A stretch of 64,000 bases of DNA from Macrostomum lignano (lineage: Eukaryota), in NCBI GenBank assembly GCA_002269645.1, contig NIVC01000717.1, positions 124,001 to 188,000 on the forward strand. The letters run 5' to 3'. A program made the position numbers and the translations under genes. Below, piece after piece: positions 22,764 to 34,159 of this stretch; within the stretch, counting starts at the first letter, position 1; every line of letters starts with the position of its first letter. Below the pieces are notes generated by a model. That model made no database searches and had not been told where the DNA came from. It saw only the letters and a program-made list of their open reading frames with translations.

Positions 22764-25432
22764 GCAAGATTTACATTGACTGCATAATACATCAATCTAT
22801 AATTGCTACATAGATCTTGTTTTGGCGTCTTGTCCTGGATCATTTAATCCATTTTTCAAAGCGTCGAACGCACGCAATATTTATAAATAATTATCGCAAC
22901 ATCAAGGTATAAGCAAAAAACGTTATAGATATCTATTTTAATATTTTAAAGCATCTTTTACAGTTTTAAGCTATAAAAATAAAAATAAATAAAAAATAAA
23001 CCCAAAGCAAGCAAAATTTGGTATACTGATTCTTTCTTGTCTTTTTCCTAGAAACGCGGTAATTTAAGTCGATGGGAGTGCGACCCTTAAAATTAAAAAA
23101 TATCAGTCAGACAGACCAAACCTTCAAACGTAAACAACGATAATGCTGAAGTTCTAACTAACAAGTTAACGTCTAAATCAATGCAAGCTCAAGTTACTTG
23201 CTTAGTTTTAACATAACTTACTAAAAAAATTAATGTTTGAATATTTTTCCGTATTAAATGCAAAGATTAAATTGCTGCTAAATAAATAATGCGGAGGTAT
23301 TAGCATTTGTGTGCTTAATTGGTAATTATATTTAAACTATTAAAACTCATCCACAAGTCGTTGTCGCTTTTTTAAGTATAGGAATATTTTTTTTCTTAGG
23401 CTAACTTAGTGATTTATGTTCTGAGCTTAATGGATGCTGGTCCATCTGGATCTGGTGCAAGTTCAAGCCCTACTTCAAAATTAACTCGGAGCACTGCCAA
23501 ACTTGATGGAACAGTTCAAAATGTAGGCACAGACGCTGACAACAGAGACAAAATTATTGATTCAAGTCGACAGCAAGATGAAGATCGCCATAATGAACAG
23601 CTCAGACAAGGTAAACCCAAAAACTAAAAGTGTTTTGTTATTGCTAATATTTGACAATTTGTCCTGGTATTAAAGTTTAATGCATTCTTTTAGATTAAAA
23701 TTGGTCAGTTACAAAAATTGCAGTTGGTTTTGAATGAAGAAAGACAAGTAAAGGTTTTTATTTTTCTAAAGGGTTTACTTGCTAGAATTTTAGCAAATTT
23801 AACATTTTAAAAATATTATAAATTCAAAGTTTAGATTTGATATCACTAAAAATTGACTAGTATAATATTATTCTAAAATGTTATTAAAATTTTTGGATTA
23901 TAATCCTCAAACATTGGCATCTAGCAAGTATGCATGTTTGGCATAGTTTTTAGTAAATGGCAGGAATATCTATGACTCTTATCGGCAATCCTACACTTCC
24001 GTTCGGTAAATTATTTTGACATTTGAATTTTGAATTTGAAACCACTGCATTGCAGACAGCATGTCCTGGGTGACGATGAGCAGATCCCGTAGCGACATGT
24101 TGAGATTGAGTAGCTCGGCGGTGTTTCGAACCTCGTTTAACGGGATGATGAACCTGGGTGCTGCAGGTCGCCCAGCCATGGCAATGAAGACAGGAAGATA
24201 TGAGAAGCTCAATAAAACAAACTGTCAAAAAGCTAGACGAGTAAGGAGATGGATCAGCTTCTCTGTTTGAACTGACTGGGGCTAGGAAAAAGAATGTTTC
24301 TTATACTGTTCGTGCTGCCCATTCCTTTTGTACAGGGACCAGTATGCTTCCGACCGGAAAAAATATCTATGGCTCAGTCAGAAGCCAAATAGTCTATGGT
24401 TTAGACTATAGTTTAGTTTAGAATAGTTTGCACCCCTTTAAACTCTGTTCGCTCAAACTTTTGGCCATAGACACATTGCCAATCAATGTCATTTGACTCG
24501 GTGGTACGAATTCAAATGTGAAAATAATTTACCGAACGGAAGTGTAGGATTGCCCTCTTATCCCTATTAGAATAAATGTTAAAAACCCGTGGACGCGCAC
24601 TTTAGAAAAGAGTCAAACTATTTTACTGCGCTTTAGGATTATTAGAGATGTTCCAAAAAATCTGCAGTTTTGTCAAAATCAAAATTTGCTAACTTTCCAA
24701 AATCAAAATTGAAATTTCCCAAAATCATAATTTAGAAAAACAAAGTTTAGTATGATCAACACTCACTTTTTTACTTTCAATTTATTGCTTGAGCAAAAAG
24801 TAATACATGTATATGTAGTAGAAAGTAGTTTTATTTTTAGCAACTTTTTAGACACAACCAAAATTTTCACTTCTAAATTTTTTTTGAAATTGAAATTCGC
24901 TCTAAAAAATTCAAAGTATGGAAAATTGAAATTGAATTTTCAGAACATCTCAAAGCTTAATAAATTACGAGTTTATAAGCCCCTTCAACAGAGGCATTAT
25001 ACCCATTTCCATGTATATGTATTTGCTAGAGCAGCAGCCAGTAATAAAGGGCAGCGTGTACGCAGACGATGCGCCTGTGCGCGCGCTATGCTTTAGAAAA
25101 ATTTCAAAAGTATGCCAGACACCGTCTGCAGTTTTACAACTTTTTCCTATAGGGACTCTTATCAAGGCTAAATGCCTCATCATTTAATTAGTACTTTGCC
25201 TATATTCAGTGCAAAAGTTAATGTTTTTTGTCATGTCTCATTTTTGAGCTACAATTTTAGACCTAATGTTACATGTCTAAAGGTTTTCTATATAGGCCTA
25301 ATTTATTTATTCTAATAGGGATATCAAATTTTCAAGATTTTTTTTGACTTGAGATCTAGGCCTATACTTTTAACTTTAAGATAATTGACATACAAGCCCA
25401 ACCTCAAAATTTCACCCATCTAGTGCAACTTA

Positions 25433-25800
25433 TTTTTTTTTTATTAGAGGCAGGGGGGTTGTGTGCACCCTGGCGCACTTTAAGCGTCATAGGCACACAA
25501 CCGGCGAGAGGCATTGCTGCCCATTCCGCCGACTCCCCTGAGCAGGCATACAAGCGCGCGGATACGTACACAGGCACACACTCACACAGGAGTGTACAGC
25601 GGCCCTAACTTTATATTATCGTTAGGCATGTACACTTCACTGCGCCTTGGTGGGTTGGCTCTCAAGGCCGCTAATTGCACGAGCAGAGCCAAGCCGAGAT
25701 TCCAATTCAGCCCCAAATTAATGTGACTGCACTTGGAATCGAGCCTGGGTCGCTGGCACACTAGAGCAGCTGCGCTACCGCTGGGCTACGGCCCCCCTCT
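25433..25800 (-). mobile_element. tRNA-derived SINE, family B, with a 13-bp TSD
   Basis: The minus strand starts GGGGGGCCGTAGCCCAGCGGTAGCGC (A-box-like), has GGCTCGATTCC (B-box-like) and ends in an A-rich tail. It is flanked by CTAGTGCAACTTA at 25420-25432 and 25801-25813. Confidence 0.85.
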
Positions 25801-27354
25801 CTAGTGCAACTTAGTTTTGTCTAGATTTGCAACTTAATTTCTCAAAATTGCAATTTAGTTCCCCTGATTGCTACTTAATTTTTATTTTGTATGACTTTTC
25901 TTGCCTTTTTCTCTTTCTTTTCTTTCTCTTTCTCTTCTCTTTTTTCTCCTTCCTTTCTTTTCTCTTTCTCTCCCTCTTCCTTCTTTTTTCCAATTTTTCA
26001 TTGTTTTGCATTTTTGATTTTGCAACTTACCTTGGCCAGTGGCCATTTCACTCATTTGGTTTGGATGGACATGGATTGGATATGTGTTGGGCATATATGA
26101 TAATTGATATTCAAGATTAAGCCTAACTTGCATATACTTGGCCTATTTATTTATATTTTTATTTATTAATATTATTATTATCACTTGTTAAATGTATACA
26201 ATGATGATAATAGAAAGATAACAATAATTACTTAATATTTGAGCTTGTTAATAACTTGGTGTATATCAAATGTAAGTATGATAACATTGGTAAGCTTGTC
26301 TCTAGTTTGTTTTGCAATTCTATTTTCAAGTTTGATTTGGTACCACAATATAATACCTCTGGCTCTGGGCACTGGATAGAATAGTTGATAGAAAATTAAA
26401 TAGAGCAGTAGCTAGAATATTAGATAAAGCAATAGATAATGCAACAAAAGTAGTGATACGAGGGGCACTACAAAAGTTTTTAGCTACATCTAAACGGAAG
26501 CATCTATGAAGCTGAAAGGGGATGTGAACTTAAGAGTCAAAATGGAGCCTGAAGCATTGGGTCCCGATTTCTCTACGCCAATCCCTTTATTTGGAGCCAA
26601 CTAGCTCCCGTTATGCCGAAAACCCGACCACTTCAGAATTTGGGGATCTCTGTGGGGAGAAAGGGGATAAATGGGGATTTCATATGAACTTAGGGCTATA
26701 GAATGGAGCCTGAAGCATTGGGTCCCAATTTCTCTACGCCAATCCCTTCATTTGGAGCCAACTAGCTCCCGTTATGCCGAAAACCCAACCACTTTAGCAT
26801 TTGGGGATCTCTGTTGGGAGAAAGGGGATAAATAGGGATTTCATGTGAACTTAAGGCTCTAGAATGGAGCCTGAAGCATTGGGTCCCGATTTCTCTATGC
26901 CAATCCCTTCATTTGGAGCCAACTAGCTCCCATTATGCCAAAAACCCGACCACTTTAGCATTTGGGGATCTCTGTGGGAAGAAAGAGGATAAATTGGGAT
27001 TTCATGTGAACTTAAGGCTCCAGAATGGAGCTCAAATGAGGCCAGCAGACCAAACCGACTGGAATCGATAACTTGTCGCCCCAGATGACTATAACCATCT
27101 GGAAATTTAGCCCTGTACTCCTATTTAATGAATGAGAAGTCAAAGAGCAATTGTATTTTAAATGCATGTAATGTCTTTGTACACTCGTATTATTATATTT
27201 ATTATTGCAGCACTCCTTTATTAGTCGGAAGCAAATATAAAATATTTTTAATTAACAAGTTGAAGGTTTTGAAAAAAAATTACTTTAATGTTTGTCATCT
27301 TGAAAGCAAAATGCGCTTTAGCTGTCGTCATACTAGTAGCAGCTCACTAACTGC

Positions 27355-28189
27355 CTAAGCCTGCACCATTGCGATCAATGTAAGGAATCCTGTTTCATGA
27401 ACAAATGGATTCCAACCTGGTTCAATCCTCATGTCATCGATTTTATACCAGACGTTGCTTTTAAAGATGCAGCAGGTGTAGTGCCCTTCTTGCATAGAGC
27501 GGCCTTAATGCGAAATAGTAAACACTGGGCAACCAAGGGACGAGACACTTCCTGCTCGATCTGACCAATTGATACTCGTGTGCAGCTTGTGCCCATTAGA
27601 TCCCGTCTGGTTAATGTGCAGCAGTGTCACTCTCCCGGCAACAGCTTTTACTTCTTGGACGGACTCACCATTGCACTCTGGATTCACACATTGCAAACGC
27701 TGTGGTGTTTGTTGTCCACGCATTGTAGAGGTTCTCAATGTTGATTGGTGCACTTGAAAACTGCTGTAATGCGATTGAAATCACTCTGCCATCGATGGTT
27801 CCATTGGGAAGCTCTTCAATGGAGCTGAGGCAGCTCTGGCAAGTTCGAACCAGAGAAAACTCTGTGAGACTGCGCGGCTCCAGTTCCATTCGCTGCAGAA
27901 CGCACTGCAGCAGTTCATTCATGCAGTGCTGCTGTCTAGGCGCGAATTGATCTGGTAGTTGGCCTCTCAATGCTTCCAAAAACCGATCTACGCTGGCAGG
28001 CCCTGTCGCCATGGCGGTCAGCAGGTCTCTCATGGCGTTATGTACCATACCGCCATTCACAGGCAATATGATCTTCATGTCGTATTGAAGAAAGTGAAAG
28101 AGCTGCACGACAACATTAGCGTAACATTGCAGACCTCTATTTGAGAGACCGACAAGTCTCGGATTCTGCGAACGGCCAAAGTCTGACTG
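27355..28189 (-). pseudogene. Ubiquitin-specific protease (peptidase C19/USP) domain inside the transposon, in frame with the transposase; one frameshift (~27720) and one internal TAA (27505-27507)
   Basis: Cys box PRLVGLSNRGLQCYANVVVQLF, QQ-box-like PRQQHCMNELL, Zn-ribbon-like CQSC and CVNPEC, and His box H*GRSMQEGHYTCCIFKSNVWYKIDD. Terminal TAG at 27355-27357. Confidence 0.82.
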
Positions 28190-30070
28190 TTAAGTCTCAT
28201 GTTGACTCTGCTGATCTTGACGATGATGTTGGGGATGCTGGCTCCGGTCCCGTTGGCTGTTTTGGTGAGCCTGAGGTGTTGTTTCATCTACACTGCCATA
28301 TAATCTGGAAATGAGTACGCGCGGAAGGACAGAATCAACGAAACGAACTCTTGCACCGGAATTCTTGTAACTTTGAGGCTCGTAGGCGTAGCAGCCTAAT
28401 ATCTTCAGCACGGCCATGACATGGCAGTCACAACCTGCTGTTTTGCTACCGGCAACTGATGTCGTGTAGTAGCCATGTAGAAATTGCAGGCCAGAATCTC
28501 GAAAGCCAAATCGGTTGCCATAGGGAGTTTTGCAGATTCGAAGAAGTACGCGATAAATCTTGGACTTGTGACGCGAGAAGACAGCAGCCAAATAGATCCA
28601 TGATGGTTGCCATTGGCCGAATTTGCTGCTCCAGTTGGTTGGCTGAGTCACTTGCAGGAACTTCCAGCATTTCAAATGACTGGGTAATTCTGATGTTAGA
28701 GCCTCAAACTGTTGCCAGGAGTCACCATCATAGCTGCCGAGTACTTCCCTGACTCGAATATTTTGAATGTAGCTGTCAGACTGTTCAAGCTGATATGGTC
28801 CCACTGACACCTCCTCTAGATTTTCGGGACAGATTCTGGGAAACCCAGAGCTTTGAGGATCTAGCGGATAAACCACGGTCCAAATCCTGGAGCTAGCAGT
28901 AGGAATTCGCGTTAGATCGCAGTTGTAGCCCAACTGCTCAATTTCATCCAGTTCGTTTGATAAAAACACACGTTGTGTAAAGTTCTGGCCGTATTCAAAG
29001 AGCGAGAGCCCGGACCATGATGGCAGAAGCTTTCTATGCGACTCAAAACCCGGATGCGTGCGATTGTACATGGCCATAGAATTCTCGATGACAACATCGA
29101 GGCGGCTGCGATCACAGAACATCGCAGGCTGCAGCCACTGATATGGTTCATGTCTTTCGTTGATGCACTTGTCTTGCTTGATTGCAGCAAAGCTGCACTC
29201 GACAAGATAACGAAACATTGTTGCACAGCGACTTGTGTTGGCTTCCAATGCCGTTAGCTTTCCAGTGATTGGTCGTCCTTGTTTTGGAACTTGGTTCTCA
29301 ACAAGTTCAAAATTCTCGTTTAGCACCTCGTCACCTGGACCAGTGGGAAAGAGGAGCGATGTATTGCCTTCGCTCTCTCTCTTTACAAAATCAGCGAAGT
29401 TTAAACTCGTTGGAGAGCAGGGCTGGCGTGTATAGCCTTTATCAAAGATAGCGACAACCTGAAAGGCACTGCAACCTGAGCACAGAATTCGTAGTAAATC
29501 TGCTTCAATTGTGCCACTTGCCTCCATTTCGAGTTGTAGTGCCGTCAGGTTTCCATCGCCAAGAACTGGTGAGATAGCGCCTGTTAGCGGCCCACAGTAG
29601 ATTATGTGTCCATGGCTGTTTACAATAGCCATCTTTTTTGTCACATTACTACTTTTGTGAGCAGAGTAGGTTCGGGTCTGAGCGTGGTGGCAGCTGCTCT
29701 TATGAAGATAAAAATAGGTGTGGTCTCCGACAAGCAATACCAGCTGCTTTCCTTTTAGCAGTCGATTGAAAACTCCAAGGATGAACTCGTCTCTCACCAC
29801 ACAGCGTTTCAACAAGCCAGATGGATCATCGCTTCTGGCAAGGAACCGTGGGTGGAAAGGATCATGGCGATACTGCTGCTCTGCTAGTTCCCAAAAAATA
29901 TCGCAAGCTCGACGGCCAGATATGTTAAAGTCAAAAGCCAGAGCTTCGAAGCTTTGACCCTGTCGTATCTTCTTCAGATAAATAAACACGCGATTCTCCT
30001 TAGACAGAAAGCGCAATCGTATAGTATCCGGAAGAAACGCGCAAAAATCATTAAACTGGTTTCGATCCAT
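28190..30070 (-). CDS. Harbinger/ISL2EU-like transposase (HTH + DDE_Tnp_4-like + degenerate SWIM-like C-terminus), 626 aa
   Basis: HTH-like YLKKIRQGQSFEALAFDFNIS; candidate triad D116 (VGDHTY), D210 (IFDKGY), E291 (RYLVECSF); QTRTYSAHK..K motif; C-terminal GYYTTSVAGSKTAGCDCHV. The frame is open ~37 codons upstream of the ATG. Confidence 0.85.
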   Translation of the reverse strand: MDRNQFNDFCAFLPDTIRLRFLSKENRVFIYLKKIRQGQSFEALAFDFNISGRRACDIFWELAEQQYRHDPFHPRFLARSDDPSGLLKRCVVRDEFILGVFNRLLKGKQLVLLVGDHTYFYLHKSSCHHAQTRTYSAHKSSNVTKKMAIVNSHGHIIYCGPLTGAISPVLGDGNLTALQLEMEASGTIEADLLRILCSGCSAFQVVAIFDKGYTRQPCSPTSLNFADFVKRESEGNTSLLFPTGPGDEVLNENFELVENQVPKQGRPITGKLTALEANTSRCATMFRYLVECSFAAIKQDKCINERHEPYQWLQPAMFCDRSRLDVVIENSMAMYNRTHPGFESHRKLLPSWSGLSLFEYGQNFTQRVFLSNELDEIEQLGYNCDLTRIPTASSRIWTVVYPLDPQSSGFPRICPENLEEVSVGPYQLEQSDSYIQNIRVREVLGSYDGDSWQQFEALTSELPSHLKCWKFLQVTQPTNWSSKFGQWQPSWIYLAAVFSRHKSKIYRVLLRICKTPYGNRFGFRDSGLQFLHGYYTTSVAGSKTAGCDCHVMAVLKILGCYAYEPQSYKNSGARVRFVDSVLPRVLISRLYGSVDETTPQAHQNSQRDRSQHPQHHRQDQQSQHET

Positions 30071-31496
30071 GCCAGTAACCCGCTCTACTAAAGTGTCTTT
30101 ACTAATGCTAGGGAAAATATTAGGATTCAGAAAACATCGGATGTATTCATCTGCTGAGTCTAAAAACCGCGCCGCGCTTCTCTAGCGTTGCGTAAAACTG
30201 GCGGCGGAACAAGAGTAGTTTTTGAAGGCGAAGATCCACATCTGCTCGTCTGCAGATGTTTAGTTAAGTTGCTAGTTTTGCTAAAAGCATGACCACACTC
30301 TGGACATGAATTGCCAGACATGACTGTGCAATCAGAAAAGTCAGATGCAAAGAAAACAAACGCAGTAAACGCAAACGGAAAAGTCCTATTACACGATAAA
30401 GTGACTCTCTGATTCGTAGCAGACTATTATGAATGAAAACCTAGCAGGAATAATATTGAAATCAAGTAGCTTGTAGCTATTAAGTAAACTGTTTAAAACT
30501 TGCTAAAGCATAAAAATAATGCAGAGCATTAAAACTTTCAAACCACTTACGCAGGCTTTCGATGTCATACTCAGCACAACATTTGAGAGCAACAGAGTTA
30601 AATACAAAAGCAAGTTAAAAAAAGCTGGCTATTGCGTTTGATGGTTCAATAAAAACATGTGCAGGTCGTTCTCTGTACAAAAATCTGCAAATAGGAAACA
30701 AAATTCTTGGTAAAATCGCATATAAATATTGATCTCACACTTTCGGTGCTTGCGAATCGGTTTTCAAAACTATAAATAAGAATGTCGAAAAATACCATAA
30801 TATAAAGATTTTTTGAGGGGGGAGGGGGCGGATCCAACTGGGTGGATTAGCCAAGGGAGGGTGGAGTTAGACAGGCTTGGATTTTTGCGAAAATTCGATT
30901 GGTCCTCCCAAACATTTATTGCGGGTCGCCTCCTAAGGTGGGGGGAGGGCGACCGCTTCCCCACCCGCCAGCCCGAATGGCGCTGATGGCACCTTATGGT
31001 CTTGGGCAATTATACCGTAAAAAACTCGCGGCCTAAACCAAAAACTGAAATGTGAGGGCCATTGACTCGCTTCTTGGTTTCCAAAATAATCACTATCCTT
31101 AACATGGCTTAAGGGCTGCATAACACTGCGCGTTTTTGAGATAAACTCTAGAGCCTTAAGTTCACATGAAATCCCCATTTATCCCCTTTCTCCCCACAGA
31201 GATCCCCAAATGCTAAAGTGGTCGGGTTTTCGGCATAACGGGAGCTAGTTGGCTCCAAATGAAGGGATTGGCGTAGAGAAATCGGGACCCAATGCTTCAG
31301 GCTCCATTCTAGAGCCTTAAGTTCACATGAAATCCCCATTTATCCCCTTTCTCCCCACAGAGATCCCCCAAATGCTAAAGTGGTCGGGTTTTCGGCATAA
31401 CGGGAGCTAGTTGGCTCCAAATAAAGGGATTGCCGTAGAGAAATCGGGACCCAATGCTTCAGGCTCCATTTTGACTCTTAAGTTCACATCCCCTTT

Positions 31497-32557
31497 TCAC
31501 AGCTTCTCAAAGTATTCTCCACCAGCCTGGATGCAGCGCCTCATCCTCTCAAACCAGTTGACGAAGCAGTGGTGCCACTCAGAAGTCGACATCCCTTCCA
31601 CCATCTTGTCGAATGCATCAGCAGCCTCCTCTGCAGTCGAAAATCGGCGCCCACGCAGCGAGTCGTTGACTTTAGGGAACAAAAAAAGTCACACGGTGCC
31701 AGATCAGGAGAGTATGGCGGGTGACTGGTCAGCTGCAGTCCCTGAGTCTGCAGGAACTGCCGTGTTGCCTGAGCCGTGTGAGTGCTCGCGTTGTCCGGAT
31801 GCAGTGTCAGGCCTCGGACACCTGACTTCGGACGCGTCCTGCTCAGGCTGTGAATGACCTGCGGCAAGCAGACGCCGGTATACCAGGCCACAGTCACCGT
31901 GCGCTGGTCCAGCAGCTGCACAGTCGCCACGTGACCTGAGCGACGGAAAAAAGTTGCGACCATTTGCTTGCCGGTGCTCCTGCCTCGCACGACCTTCATT
32001 GGCGGCACCTCGTCCGGAAACGCCCACACCTGCGACTGGCACTTGCGCTCTGGCTCGTAGCAGTAAACCCAAGTCTCGTCGCATGTTACAATGTCGGCGA
32101 CCGCCTTAGACGCTCCATCGCTGTACTTCTGCAGCATCTGGCGACACCAGTCGACCCTGGCCTGCTTCTGCTCAGGCTTCAGCAGGTGGGGCACCCAACA
32201 ACTGGTCAGCTTGCGCAAGCCGATGTGGTTGTGGAGGATTTTGGCGATGGCCGGCGAATGGATGCCCAGGGATGCCTCGATCTCCTTGTAGGTTATCCGC
32301 CAGTCAGCTTCTACCAGCTGGCGGACACGAGCCACTGTTTCTGGTGTCGTGGCAGTTGAAGGTCGGCCTGTACGCTCCTCATCTTCCAACGAGTCTCGGC
32401 CACGACGAAACTCGCGGAACCAGTTGCTGACGGTCGCAAGTGATGGAGCAGCTTCTGGAAAAGTCGCTGACAGCCTTTCGTGGCACTGGCGGCAATCAAG
32501 GCCGCTGCGATAATCATAGAAGATCATGGCACGAAAGTGCTCGCGATTCAGTTCCAT
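31497..32557 (-). pseudogene. mariner transposase with a 1-nt deletion in the homopolymer at 31681-31687
   Basis: WVPHLL, TCDETW, HPDNAS and YSPDLAPCDFF are present. Adding one T restores CDFFLFPK..GGEYFEKL*. Confidence 0.92.
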
Positions 32558-34159
32558 GAGCTCCGCTGGAAAGTGGGCAGAGGTGCTGTAAGTTATCTGG
32601 CTCTAGCGGCTAAATGCTGCGAGATATTTGCGTGAAATTTTATTCATCATGGTCATATATATTGTCCTGTAAGCCTGTAAAAAATTAATCTGATAGGACA
32701 AACGGCTGAGGTGTAGCTAAAAACTTTCGTAGTGCCCCTCGTATATAGAGTGGTTTATAGAGTAGTAGAAGATAAGAGCTAGAGGCTAGAGCATTTTCTG
32801 ATACCATTTTCTATTCCTTTTGGCCATAAACATCATTTTCTACCATGGCACTATATTGCAACACTGATTATAACTTGAAAAAATATCAGGAAACAAACTA
32901 AAAGATTACTATAACAGCATAATATCATAGTCACAAGTAGTCAAATAATATCAAATCTTTATTTTTTAGATCTCAAAACTGAGATTGAGATTAAAAAAGT
33001 CATAAGATATTGACAATCGAGATTGAAATCTTGTCCAACTCTTGTCTAACTTTTTATGCAATATTTTTAAGTTAGAAATAAAGTGAATCATTTAGATTTT
33101 AATAAGTCTAAATAGCAACTAATAAGCAAATCAAATTAATTCCTGCTTTTATTACTTAAAATATAACTTTTGTTAAGTAAATAATTCAGTCATATTTTTT
33201 CCTAGGTTTTTTCACTAGAAACAAGATGAATCTATTGCAGTCTAATGCAATTTTTCCTTAGACAACTTTTTAAAATATACCTAGTTCTAAAATAACTTTC
33301 CTACACTCTATATACTTTATAGAATTGTTACATGTTTTTTTATATTTAGAAAATCTTTTAAACTAGGAGTCTGTTTATAGCATAGGTCTAAACTATATTA
33401 GATGACCTTTTTTCCTATGACCTACATTGGACACCTATTTCCTTCCCCCATATGCTTGCAGTTTGCAGTAAAAATATCCAACTAAGTCAAAGGCAGACCT
33501 AGAAAATTTCGAGGGTTGGGGCAAGTTGTTCTAAGCGACTGTAACCCAATATTAGGAAACAGACCTTGCATGGTTATAGGGTAAAAAAGTATAGCCCAAT
33601 TTTTTTTGGGCATGGCACTATAGCCCCCCCCCTTGGGCCCTCTCCTTGGATCTATCCATGCATTAAGCATTTTAGACTATACTTTTAAATTGGGTTGGTT
33701 GGTATCTAGGTTTTTTTAAATAATAGATTTGTAGTATTGTTTGACAAATTGGGTCCAAATTCAAGTTGCCAAATTGAAAGCCAGAATGCTAGTTGGCATT
33801 AGTTAAACAATTAAAAATTAAATAAATTACTAAAGTCTCTACCCTACTCTTTACAATGATAAGTCTTTCTCATCTATAGAATTTACAAAGCATATAGACT
33901 TCATGCTTGTGGATTACTGAGACATAACAATTGATAAAAAATTTTCATAAATGAATTCAATAATTAATGGATTATAGATACTTCAACAAATGCCCATTTT
34001 GAATTCAGAGTCCACATTCAAGGTGGCAACATTACAGTTGAAATATCATAACACAGTATCACAAAAACCTTACCTATGCCTTCAACTTAAAAATTTAACA
34101 TGTTTAATGTAGGCTATTTTTATAAAACAAAATCTTAATAGACATTTCTTTAATTTTAG

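What the first reader, a model, noticed from the sequence alone, without database searches (positions are those of the whole stretch)
27355..30070. DNA transposon whose transposase is followed in frame by a ubiquitin-specific protease
Seen: the 626-aa HTH-DDE-SWIM-like ORF ends at TAA 28190-28192 after a Q/H-rich linker. The same frame continues QSDFGRSQNPRLVGLSNRGLQCYANVVVQLF (USP Cys box), then CQSC/CVNPEC and GHY..WYKIDD (His/Asp box). All of it lies between the element's TIRs. Known: SUMO (Ulp1/C48) and OTU proteases are recognised cargo of several DNA-transposon groups. I do not recall a USP/C19 deubiquitinase described as part of a Harbinger/ISL2EU/Spy-type transposase, but I cannot search. 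Inference: the ancestral product is a ~900-aa transposase-deubiquitinase that could protect itself from degradation or strip histone ubiquitin at target chromatin. This copy's USP is decayed (one frameshift, one stop).
Basis: partly seen in the sequence, partly recalled or inferred. Interest (0 to 1): 0.88.

Follow-up and report, generated by a model that had tools for sequence, protein, structure and literature searches.

The report
Spy-type transposon with built-in deubiquitinase
The window holds a decayed copy of a cut-and-paste DNA transposon whose transposase normally ends in a ubiquitin-specific protease, a fusion that is intact in other copies, conserved across distant relatives, and not described for this transposon group in the papers I could search.

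Summary
The element spans window 26518-31493 on the minus strand. It sits inside a mariner copy between AAAA and TTT with no target-site duplication, which is the Spy hallmark. Both ends carry inverted arrays of 161-bp repeats.

The window copy is broken: one frameshift after an N-terminal C2H2 finger, the TAA at 28190-28192, and one frameshift plus one stop in the USP. A 99%-identical twin locus (C3075) has an intact 1022-codon frame: C2H2, HTH, DDE, Q/H-rich linker, USP.

A sister family (67% nt identity) has at least 12 copies that are 99-100% identical, each with an open 995-codon frame. Pfam UCH scores 37.5 bits against a cut-off of 23.9. The catalytic Cys, His and Asp are conserved in seven diverged lineages, including marine metagenome contigs. 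The AlphaFold model matches USP2, USP18 and USP46 (E about 1e-15).

One-off capture and a nested element are both refuted. Deubiquitinase cargo is known in Helitron-like and Ginger elements. I found no report of a USP fused to a DDE transposase of the PIF/Harbinger-ISL2EU-Spy (PHIS) superfamily. What the USP does is inferred, not shown.

The parts
26518..31493 (-). Whole element (4976 bp). Termini read 5'-GGGGATGTGAACTTAAG...CTTAAGTTCACATCCCC-3'. It is a pseudogenised autonomous copy.
   Evidence: The joined flanks equal uninterrupted mariner copies, GTGAAAA|TTTCAG. Both termini are preceded by AAA.
31147..31493 (-). 5' terminal inverted repeat region: terminal motif plus 2.1 units of a 161/162-bp tandem repeat. 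Each unit carries a copy of the terminal motif, GGGGAT(TTCA)TGTGAACTTAAG.
26518..27036 (-). 3' terminal inverted repeat region: 3.2 units of the same 161-bp repeat in inverted orientation.
30184..30321 (-). N-terminal segment with the start Met (30319-30321) and a C2H2 zinc finger (CPECGHAFSKTSNLTKHLQTSRC). In this copy a frameshift at about 30163-30185 cuts it off from the main frame.
   Evidence: Pfam zf-C2H2 E 4.4e-5. The intact twin reads straight through.
28193..30181 (-). Transposase body: HTH_Tnp_4-like helix-turn-helix (29894-30007), proposed DDE triad D 29723-29725, D 29441-29443, E 29198-29200, a large conserved C-terminal domain with a degenerate Cys/His motif (GCDCH at about 28421-28435), then a Q/H-rich linker.
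   Evidence: AlphaFold model of the sister-family homologue: pLDDT 86.8.
28190..28192 (-). Premature TAA between linker and USP. The intact twin has a Ser codon here.
27358..28189 (-). USP (peptidase C19) domain, decayed. Catalytic Cys 28124-28126. Zinc-ribbon CQSC 27830-27841 and CVNPEC 27673-27690. Frameshift at about 27706-27712. In-frame stop 27505-27507. Catalytic His 27481-27483 and Asp 27436-27438. Natural stop 27355-27357.
31494..32602 (-). Upstream part of the host mariner-like element that received the insertion. Its transposase frame is 31541-32602, and the last bases before the insertion read ...GTGAAAA.
26457..26517 (-). Downstream remainder of the same mariner element (TTTCAGCTTCATAG... 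to its 3' end).
   Evidence: other mariner copies match the joined flanks up to position 168-169

Best explanation
**What it is (shown).** The locus is a dead copy of an autonomous cut-and-paste DNA transposon with Spy-type insertion behaviour, in the PHIS superfamily (Repbase files Spy under ISL2EU). Its single intronless gene natively encodes one polypeptide of about 980 aa. The order is an N-terminal C2H2 finger, a helix-turn-helix, a DDE catalytic core, a large conserved C-terminal transposase domain, a disordered Q/H/S-rich linker, and a compact (about 270 aa) USP-class deubiquitinase.

**How it moves (inferred).** The DNA-binding parts recognise the terminal motif GGGGATGT[C/G]AACTTAAG. 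That motif is repeated in every unit of the 161-bp arrays at both ends. The DDE core cuts at AAA|GGGG and inserts between AAA and TTT without a target-site duplication.

**What the USP does (inferred).** It is a working deubiquitinase tethered to the transposase. Most probably it strips ubiquitin from the transposase or transpososome, so that the host cannot degrade or extract it. Removing ubiquitin marks from chromatin or from break-repair signalling at the donor or target site is the main alternative.

**This copy (shown).** The window copy lost the frame in four places and is non-functional. Intact relatives in the same genome are probably still mobile.
For: **Architecture**
- Open frames of 995 and 1022 codons in the sister family and the twin locus.
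- Pfam on the 978-aa protein: zf-C2H2 (18.6 bits, below its 25.2 cut-off), HTH_Tnp_4 (22.7 bits, below its 27 cut-off) and UCH at aa 715-958, 37.5 bits against a cut-off of 23.9.

**Mobility and family**
- At least 12 copies are 99-100% identical with no stops.
- Homology between copies ends exactly at the termini.
- 21 of 21 termini are preceded by AAA followed by unrelated flanks.
- A paralogous empty site in mariner copies shows no TSD.
- Internal-deletion derivatives exist.

**USP is real and competent-looking**
- A profile of the fusion proteins hits human USP2, USP46, USP12, USP18 and USP21 at E about 4e-18.
- The model has pLDDT 80.3. Foldseek gives USP2 at E 2e-15, TM 0.67.
- Catalytic Cys, His and Asp/Asn are conserved in all seven lineages aligned.

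**USP is kept by selection**
- Between the two families, synonymous sites are saturated (pS 0.81-0.88).
- Non-synonymous difference (pN) is 0.38 in the USP and 0.22-0.25 in the transposase.

**The fusion is old and widespread**
- Fusion proteins are found in ENA, Logan, TARA and JGI metagenome contigs at 22-35% identity: P0011, P0034, P0023, P0171, P0047, P0007.
- One JGI sample has the same architecture and a similar terminus, AAA|GAGGATGTCAAC.
Against: - No experiment shows deubiquitinase activity or a role in transposition.
- The QQD motif of cellular USPs is replaced (HC.NE), and the domain evolves about 1.6 times faster than the transposase core.
- Membership in Spy rests on insertion behaviour. 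The DDE spacing is D(93)D(80)E, against the published D(79-80)D(44-62)E. The terminus is GGGGATGT, not GGANNNNG. The transposase has a C2H2 finger, which most Spy elements lack.
- The transposase model has only weak PDB matches: Tn5 transposase, E 0.046.
- Some homologues appear to lack a USP. Several of those are truncated gene calls.
Confidence: 0.8

Rival explanations
1. The USP acts on chromatin or DNA-break signalling, not on the transposase. It would remove histone H2A/H2B ubiquitin or repair-pathway ubiquitin (PCNA, or RNF8/RNF168-type marks). That could open target or donor chromatin, or steer repair of the excision break toward copying the element back.
For: The USP is tethered to a DNA-bound enzyme by a flexible linker, with pLDDT below 50 in the linker. 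The closest structures include USP46 and USP12. The suggestion that these act on chromatin or repair substrates is my own recollection, not something I checked.
Against: Nothing in the sequence points to a substrate. No histone- or PCNA-binding motif was identified. Fold similarity among USP cores does not predict substrate.
Confidence: 0.3
2. The USP domain is kept as a ubiquitin- or UBL-binding or scaffolding module, or is specific for another ubiquitin-like modifier, and is not a general deubiquitinase.
For: USP18, which is ISG15-specific, is among the best structural matches. The QQD motif is altered and the domain is unusually compact.
Against: The full catalytic triad is conserved in all seven lineages despite 22-40% identity. 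That pattern is expected for an enzyme and not for a scaffold.
Confidence: 0.12
3. One-off gene capture or a nested second element: the USP belongs to a host gene fragment or a separate transposon that landed next to this transposase.
For: In the window copy alone, a stop codon separates the two parts.
Against: Intact in-frame fusions exist in the twin locus, in at least 12 sister-family copies, and in several other lineages and organisms. No inverted repeats flank the USP. Deletion derivatives keep the USP next to the 3' end.
Confidence: 0.02
4. The locus is a domesticated host gene derived from a transposase, not a transposon.
For: The twin locus has a long intact frame in a conserved position.
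Against: It retains both inverted-repeat ends and sits inside a mariner copy. Its twin is explained by a duplicated genome region. Related families are multi-copy with unrelated flanks.
Confidence: 0.03

Closest known systems
Spy transposons (Han et al. 2014, PMC4122938; cgSpy and cvSpy, PMC11304231). They belong to the PHIS superfamily and are filed under ISL2EU in Repbase (PMC12730594).
   Same: Insertion precisely between AAA and TTT with no target-site duplication. A single long ORF. An N-terminal HTH plus a DDE core with PIF/IS5-type motifs. TIR length highly variable. The transposase part is about 700 aa, as in active Spy elements.
   Different: A C-terminal USP domain, not mentioned in any of the Spy or PHIS papers read. 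An N-terminal C2H2 finger. DDE spacing of D(93)D(80)E. Long TIRs built of 161-bp tandem sub-repeats, whereas the 2014 paper reports no sub-repeat structure. Terminus GGGGATGT rather than GGANNNNG. Hyvu-Spy-1 of Hydra is listed with a 963-aa ORF and may be of this type, but I could not check it.
Helitron-like elements carrying deubiquitinase domains: OTU, VTD/Herpes_teg_N and UCH in HLE2 (PMC9741609, PMC11417382)
   Same: Mobile elements that stably carry a cysteine deubiquitinase, sometimes in the same ORF as the transposition enzyme. The authors suggest it protects transposition proteins from proteasomal degradation.
   Different: Those are rolling-circle RepHel elements, not DDE cut-and-paste elements. 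The UCH report there is a domain census without characterisation.
Ginger DNA transposons with Ulp1/OTU proteases (PMC2836005). Mutator-like elements with Ulp1 are recalled from my own knowledge and were not checked here.
   Same: Cut-and-paste transposons that carry a ubiquitin-like-modifier protease.
   Different: The protease classes differ (C48 SUMO protease and OTU, not USP/C19), and so do the transposase superfamilies.
Cellular USPs with minimal catalytic cores (USP2, USP18, USP46/12, USP21)
   Same: Fingers-palm-thumb fold, Cys box, His box, Asp/Asn and a zinc ribbon.
   Different: Only 15-19% identity. About 270 aa, shorter than the 300-350 aa cores. QQD motif altered. Fused to a transposase.

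Membership tests
Spy group of PHIS DNA transposons | No target-site duplication on insertion | tested here: met
   The joined flanks of the window element are identical to uninterrupted paralogous mariner copies, GTGAAAA|TTTCAG.
Spy group of PHIS DNA transposons | [quoted passage not shown] | tested here: met
   21 of 21 termini from about 14 insertions are preceded by AAA followed by unrelated flanks. The empty site shows AAA and TTT are host bases.
Spy group of PHIS DNA transposons | Single ORF encoding an HTH + DDE transposase related to PIF/Harbinger, ISL2EU and IS5 | tested here: inconclusive
   There is a single ORF. HTH_Tnp_4 scores 21-23 bits, below its cut-off of 27, and DDE_Tnp_4 only 12 bits in the window copy. 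Homologues P0008 and P0009 pass DDE_Tnp_4 at 32.4 and 27.4 bits against a cut-off of 24.8. The motifs xDxTY, xDxGY and RxxVE are conserved.
Spy group of PHIS DNA transposons | Published DDE spacing D(79-80)D(44-62)E | tested here: not met
   My assignment gives D(93)D(80)E here and D(92-96)D(74-102)E across 20 homologues. The published triad may have been assigned differently.
Spy group of PHIS DNA transposons | Terminal consensus 5'-GGANNNNG-3' | tested here: not met
   Termini read GGGGATGTG/C. GGA is present only from the third base. Active cgSpy also starts GGG.
Spy group of PHIS DNA transposons | Transposase clusters with reference Spy transposases in a phylogeny | not testable with these tools
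   No Repbase or Dfam reference sequences were available.
USP / peptidase C19 deubiquitinases | Match to Pfam UCH (PF00443) above the gathering score | tested here: met
   37.5 bits in the intact sister-family protein and 24.3 bits in the window fragment, against a cut-off of 23.9. Metagenome fusions score 38.9-55.2 bits (P0034, P0023, P0011, P0007).
USP / peptidase C19 deubiquitinases | Catalytic Cys box, His box and Asp/Asn | tested here: met
   Conserved in all lineages aligned and aligned to the USP2 catalytic residues.
USP / peptidase C19 deubiquitinases | USP fold | tested here: met
   AlphaFold pLDDT 80.3, pTM 0.79. Foldseek gives USP2, USP18, USP46 and USP15 at E 2e-15 to 1e-13, TM 0.60-0.67.
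USP / peptidase C19 deubiquitinases | Isopeptidase activity on ubiquitin conjugates | not testable with these tools
   Needs a biochemical assay.
PIF/Harbinger sensu stricto | 3-bp TWA target-site duplication and a second Myb/SANT ORF | tested here: not met
   No TSD. No second ORF of 120 aa or more inside the sister-family element, and none over 100 aa in the window element.
ISL2EU sensu stricto | 2-bp AT TSD, THAP domain, YqaJ exonuclease ORF | tested here: not met
   No TSD. A C2H2 finger in place of THAP and no second ORF.
   No SWIM hit at E up to 1. Relatives share C-x3-5-C-x7-CC-x-H, but the two lineages of this genome lack the first two Cys.

The most novel reading that the evidence does not exclude
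A widespread and so far undescribed clade of Spy-like (PHIS) cut-and-paste transposons has an active USP deubiquitinase built into the transposase itself, and transposition depends on that activity. This would make ubiquitination a general host brake on DNA transposition, one that unrelated mobile elements (Helitrons, herpesviruses and now DDE transposons) have each countered by acquiring a deubiquitinase. The intact, nearly identical copies in this genome would then be a naturally active element that inserts without a target-site duplication and carries its own stabiliser.
Probability: 0.3. Interest if true: 0.8.

Novelty: new variant of a known kind. Interest (0 to 1): 0.68.

Why it matters
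- **It extends a known theme to a new class.** Transposon-borne deubiquitinases were known from rolling-circle elements and SUMO/OTU cargo. This adds a USP-class enzyme fused in frame to a DDE transposase. Independent acquisition of different deubiquitinase classes by unrelated mobile elements argues that the ubiquitin system limits transposition.
- **The question becomes testable.** Intact copies exist, and Spy elements already work in human-cell transposition assays (PMC11304231). Wild-type, catalytic-dead and USP-deleted transposases can be compared directly.
- **The host may be a tractable model.** The genome's size and scaffold count match the Macrostomum lignano Mlig_3_7 assembly. If that identification holds, the host is a flatworm with transgenesis.
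- **Annotation and enzymology.** The about 270-aa USP core is among the smallest and may interest deubiquitinase enzymologists. Genome annotators should expect 'USP-like genes' that are really transposon ORFs.

Tried and rejected
1. **Word-index protein searches.** They found almost nothing: one hit, then three. The exhaustive HMMER search was needed.
2. **Fetching the more diverged lineages of this genome.** Their architecture is known only from the coordinates.
3. **dN/dS between the two families.** It cannot be given as a ratio because synonymous sites are saturated, with pS above 0.75. Only pN and pS are reported.
4. **Ends of the TARA-contig element (L048-L051).** Its left boundary does not look like AAA|GG, and its right end is not reached by the contigs. 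I left this unresolved.
5. **Foldseek of the transposase model against the PDB.** Only weak DDE-enzyme matches came back: Tn5 transposase, E 0.046. This is not usable for classification.
6. **SWIM domain.** No HMM support.
7. **Whether USP-bearing transposases form one clade.** The result is ambiguous, with 4 changes on the tree. Many 'USP-less' rows are truncated gene calls.
8. **tRNA-like string near 25.4-25.8 kb.** ARAGORN found no tRNA.
Full report
**Observation.** On the minus strand a 663-codon stop-to-stop frame (30181..28193) ends at TAA 28190-28192 after a Q/H-rich stretch. The same frame then reads QSDFGRSQNPRLVGLSNRGLQCYANVVVQLF.... Pfam gives HTH_Tnp_4 (E 2e-4) and a faint DDE_Tnp_4 on the first part. 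It gives UCH (PF00443) on the 174-aa continuation at 24.3 bits, just above the cut-off of 23.9. The rest of the USP lies in a second frame after a frameshift at about 27706-27712. That frame holds CVNPEC, an in-frame stop at 27505-27507, then GHY, WYKIDD and the natural stop at 27355-27357. Upstream, a Met at 30319-30321 opens a C2H2 finger that another frameshift separates from the main frame.

**Element boundaries and insertion behaviour.** Inverted arrays of a 161-bp tandem repeat lie at 26522-27031 (3.2 units) and 31147-31489 (2.1 units). The outermost bases are GGGGATGTGAACTTAAG at both ends. The element sits in the 3' part of a mariner-like element. When the two flanks are joined, they match uninterrupted mariner copies elsewhere in the genome base for base across the junction...GCTGTGAAAA|TTTCAGCTTC.... 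So the element is 26518-31493, made no target-site duplication, and inserted between A's and T's. In all 21 termini available from about 14 independent insertions of this and sister families, AAA directly precedes GGGGATGT[C/G]AACTTAAG and the sequence further out is unrelated. Absence of a TSD together with an AAA|TTT target is the diagnostic property of Spy transposons (PMC4122938). Spy belongs to the PHIS superfamily and is filed under ISL2EU in Repbase (PMC12730594).

**The fusion is the native gene.**
- A second locus, C3075, is 99% identical to the window element. It shares the same mariner context and flanks for more than 2 kb on both sides and differs in the number of 161-bp units. It is therefore the same insertion in a duplicated or allelic region.
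- That twin has an intact 1022-codon frame: MSGNSCPKCGH... (C2H2), HTH, DDE...QDQQSQHET-S-QSDFGRSQNPRLVGLSNRGLQCYAN..., ending ...GHYTCCIFKSNVWYKIDDMRIEPGWNPFVHETGFLTLIAMVQA.
- A sister family (67% nucleotide and 57% amino-acid identity) has at least 12 copies that are 99-100% identical to each other, each with an open 995-codon frame.
- On its 978-aa product, Pfam finds zf-C2H2 and HTH_Tnp_4 (both below their cut-offs) and UCH over aa 715-958, covering profile positions 2-237 of 254, at 37.5 bits.
- Homology among these copies stops exactly at the termini, and the arrays vary from 2 to more than 25 units.
- Further lineages in the genome at 37-50% identity are collinear from the transposase into the USP.
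- Short non-autonomous derivatives are internal deletions that keep the ends. Some keep the USP remnant next to the 3' end.
- None of this fits a one-off capture or a nested second element.

**The USP looks like an enzyme under selection.**
- A profile of seven fusion proteins matches human USP2, USP46, USP12, USP18, USP21, USP15 and USP8 in the PDB at E down to 4e-18. The Cys box, His box and Asp/Asn align to the USP2 catalytic residues.
- An AlphaFold model of the sister-family domain has pLDDT 80.3 and pTM 0.79. Foldseek returns only USP catalytic domains at the top: USP2 at E 2e-15 and TM 0.67, then USP18, USP46, USP15 and USP4.
- The catalytic Cys, His and Asp/Asn are present in every lineage aligned, although identity to the sister-family domain is only 17-40%. 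The four zinc-ribbon cysteines are kept in most of them.
- Between the window family and the sister family, synonymous sites are saturated (pS 0.81-0.88). Non-synonymous difference is 0.38 in the USP against 0.22-0.25 in the transposase. The USP is constrained, but less tightly than the core.
- In the 978-aa protein the catalytic residues are C723, H938 and D952.

**The transposase.** The motifs LVGDHTY, IFDKGY and RYLVECSFAAIK fit the PIF/IS5 pattern. The three acidic residues are conserved in some 20 homologues with spacing D(92-96)D(74-102)E. This is not the published Spy spacing of D(79-80)D(44-62)E. The terminus is not the published GGANNNNG either, and the protein has a C2H2 finger that most Spy elements lack. 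The 700-aa transposase part models with high confidence (pLDDT 86.8). No solved structure is close; the best match is Tn5 transposase at E 0.046. The C-terminal domain carries a Cys/His motif (C-x3-5-C-x7-CC-x-H) in relatives. It resembles SWIM but is not recognised by Pfam, and it is degenerate in this genome's lineages. I therefore file the element as Spy-like on behaviour. Phylogenetic membership remains untested.

**Distribution.**
- An exhaustive HMMER search of 1.84 billion representative proteins found 123 relatives.
- Among those I scanned, several are transposase-USP fusions from marine and other metagenome contigs. They are P0011 (1048 aa), P0034 (1119 aa, TARA Oceans contigs), P0023 (955 aa), P0171 (1340 aa) and P0047 (1639 aa), at 22-31% identity.
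- One protein, P0210, may carry the USP on the N-terminal side. Its UCH score of 22.9 bits is just under the cut-off.
- Two overlapping contigs from one JGI sample rebuild the same architecture at about 50% identity. They have a terminus AAA|GAGGATGTCAACTTAGG.
- Other homologues have no USP. Several of those are truncated gene calls, so the number of gains and losses is unresolved.
- One relative is a UniRef protein of Macrostomum lignano.
- The genome has 764,410,778 bases in 5269 contigs. The Mlig_3_7 assembly of that flatworm has 764 Mb and 5270 scaffolds and is known to contain duplicated chromosome sequence (PMC8629364). The host is therefore probably M. lignano, which would explain the twin locus. 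This is an inference.

**What is known.**
- The Spy, PHIS and cgSpy papers do not mention ubiquitin, a protease or UCH.
- The cgSpy supplement lists a Hydra Spy with a 963-aa ORF, against about 660-700 aa for the others. It may be of this type.
- Deubiquitinases in mobile elements are known. OTU and viral-tegument-like deubiquitinases occur in Helitrons, with activity shown for the latter (PMC9741609). UCH is listed among domains stably captured by Helitron-like HLE2 elements (PMC11417382). Ulp1 and OTU occur in Ginger (PMC2836005).
- I found no description of a USP fused to a DDE transposase. I could not search Repbase or Dfam.

**Mechanism and verdict.**
- Shown: the architecture, the ends, the TSD-less AAA|TTT insertion, the multi-copy intact sister family, and the USP fold and catalytic residues.
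- Inferred: the finger and HTH bind the terminal motif reiterated in the 161-bp units. The tethered USP removes ubiquitin, most likely from the transposase complex itself to escape degradation. This parallels what has been proposed for Helitron and herpesvirus deubiquitinases.
- Rival: the USP acts on chromatin or break-repair ubiquitin marks.
The feature is a new variant of known kinds (Spy-type transposon, deubiquitinase cargo) rather than a new category.

Noticed in passing
window 26457-26517 and 31494-32602 (and further upstream): The Spy-like element interrupts a mariner-like element. The mariner's transposase frame (353 codons) is frameshifted near its 3' end. At least 40 related mariner copies exist in the genome.
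   Followed up: partly
C3075:75000-84999 (L035) versus window 25200-32600: A twin locus, 99% identical including flanks and the mariner context, differs in the number of 161-bp repeat units. The twin's gene is intact while the window's has four disabling changes. This is probably a duplicated chromosome region of a neopolyploid genome.
   Followed up: partly
G000 C1388:60067-64852, C199:382940-391772, C659:479208-485600 (coordinates): The 161-bp subterminal repeat forms arrays of more than 25 units at some element ends and in places without a detected transposase. It behaves like a satellite seeded by the transposon ends.
   Followed up: no
G000 C1171:61885-63135, C946:313629-314879, C197:162550-163806, C46:232298-233551: Four loci have open 448-481-codon frames that are 43-44% identical to aa 388-808 of the fusion protein (transposase C-terminal domain plus the start of the USP) and have no stops. 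They could be another family or a domesticated derivative. I could not fetch them.
   Followed up: no
P0210 (924 aa, ENA metagenome contig): A relative in which the UCH-like region (aa 265-504, 22.9 bits) seems to lie N-terminal to the transposase, the reverse domain order.
   Followed up: no
L048:1568-2932 (TARA Oceans contig): The marine relative encoding the 1119-aa transposase-USP also carries a conserved upstream 454-aa ORF with no Pfam match. The ends of that element could not be defined.
   Followed up: partly
window about 25400-26030: Just outside the mariner remnant lies a stretch that looks like a tRNA-derived SINE head (GGGGCCGTAGCCCAGCGGTAGCGCAG...GGCTCGATTCCAAG). ARAGORN finds no tRNA there. 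A GA-rich microsatellite sits next to it.
   Followed up: partly
L039:906-1328 (C1039): A histone H3 gene lies about 0.8 kb from one end of a sister-family copy.
   Followed up: no
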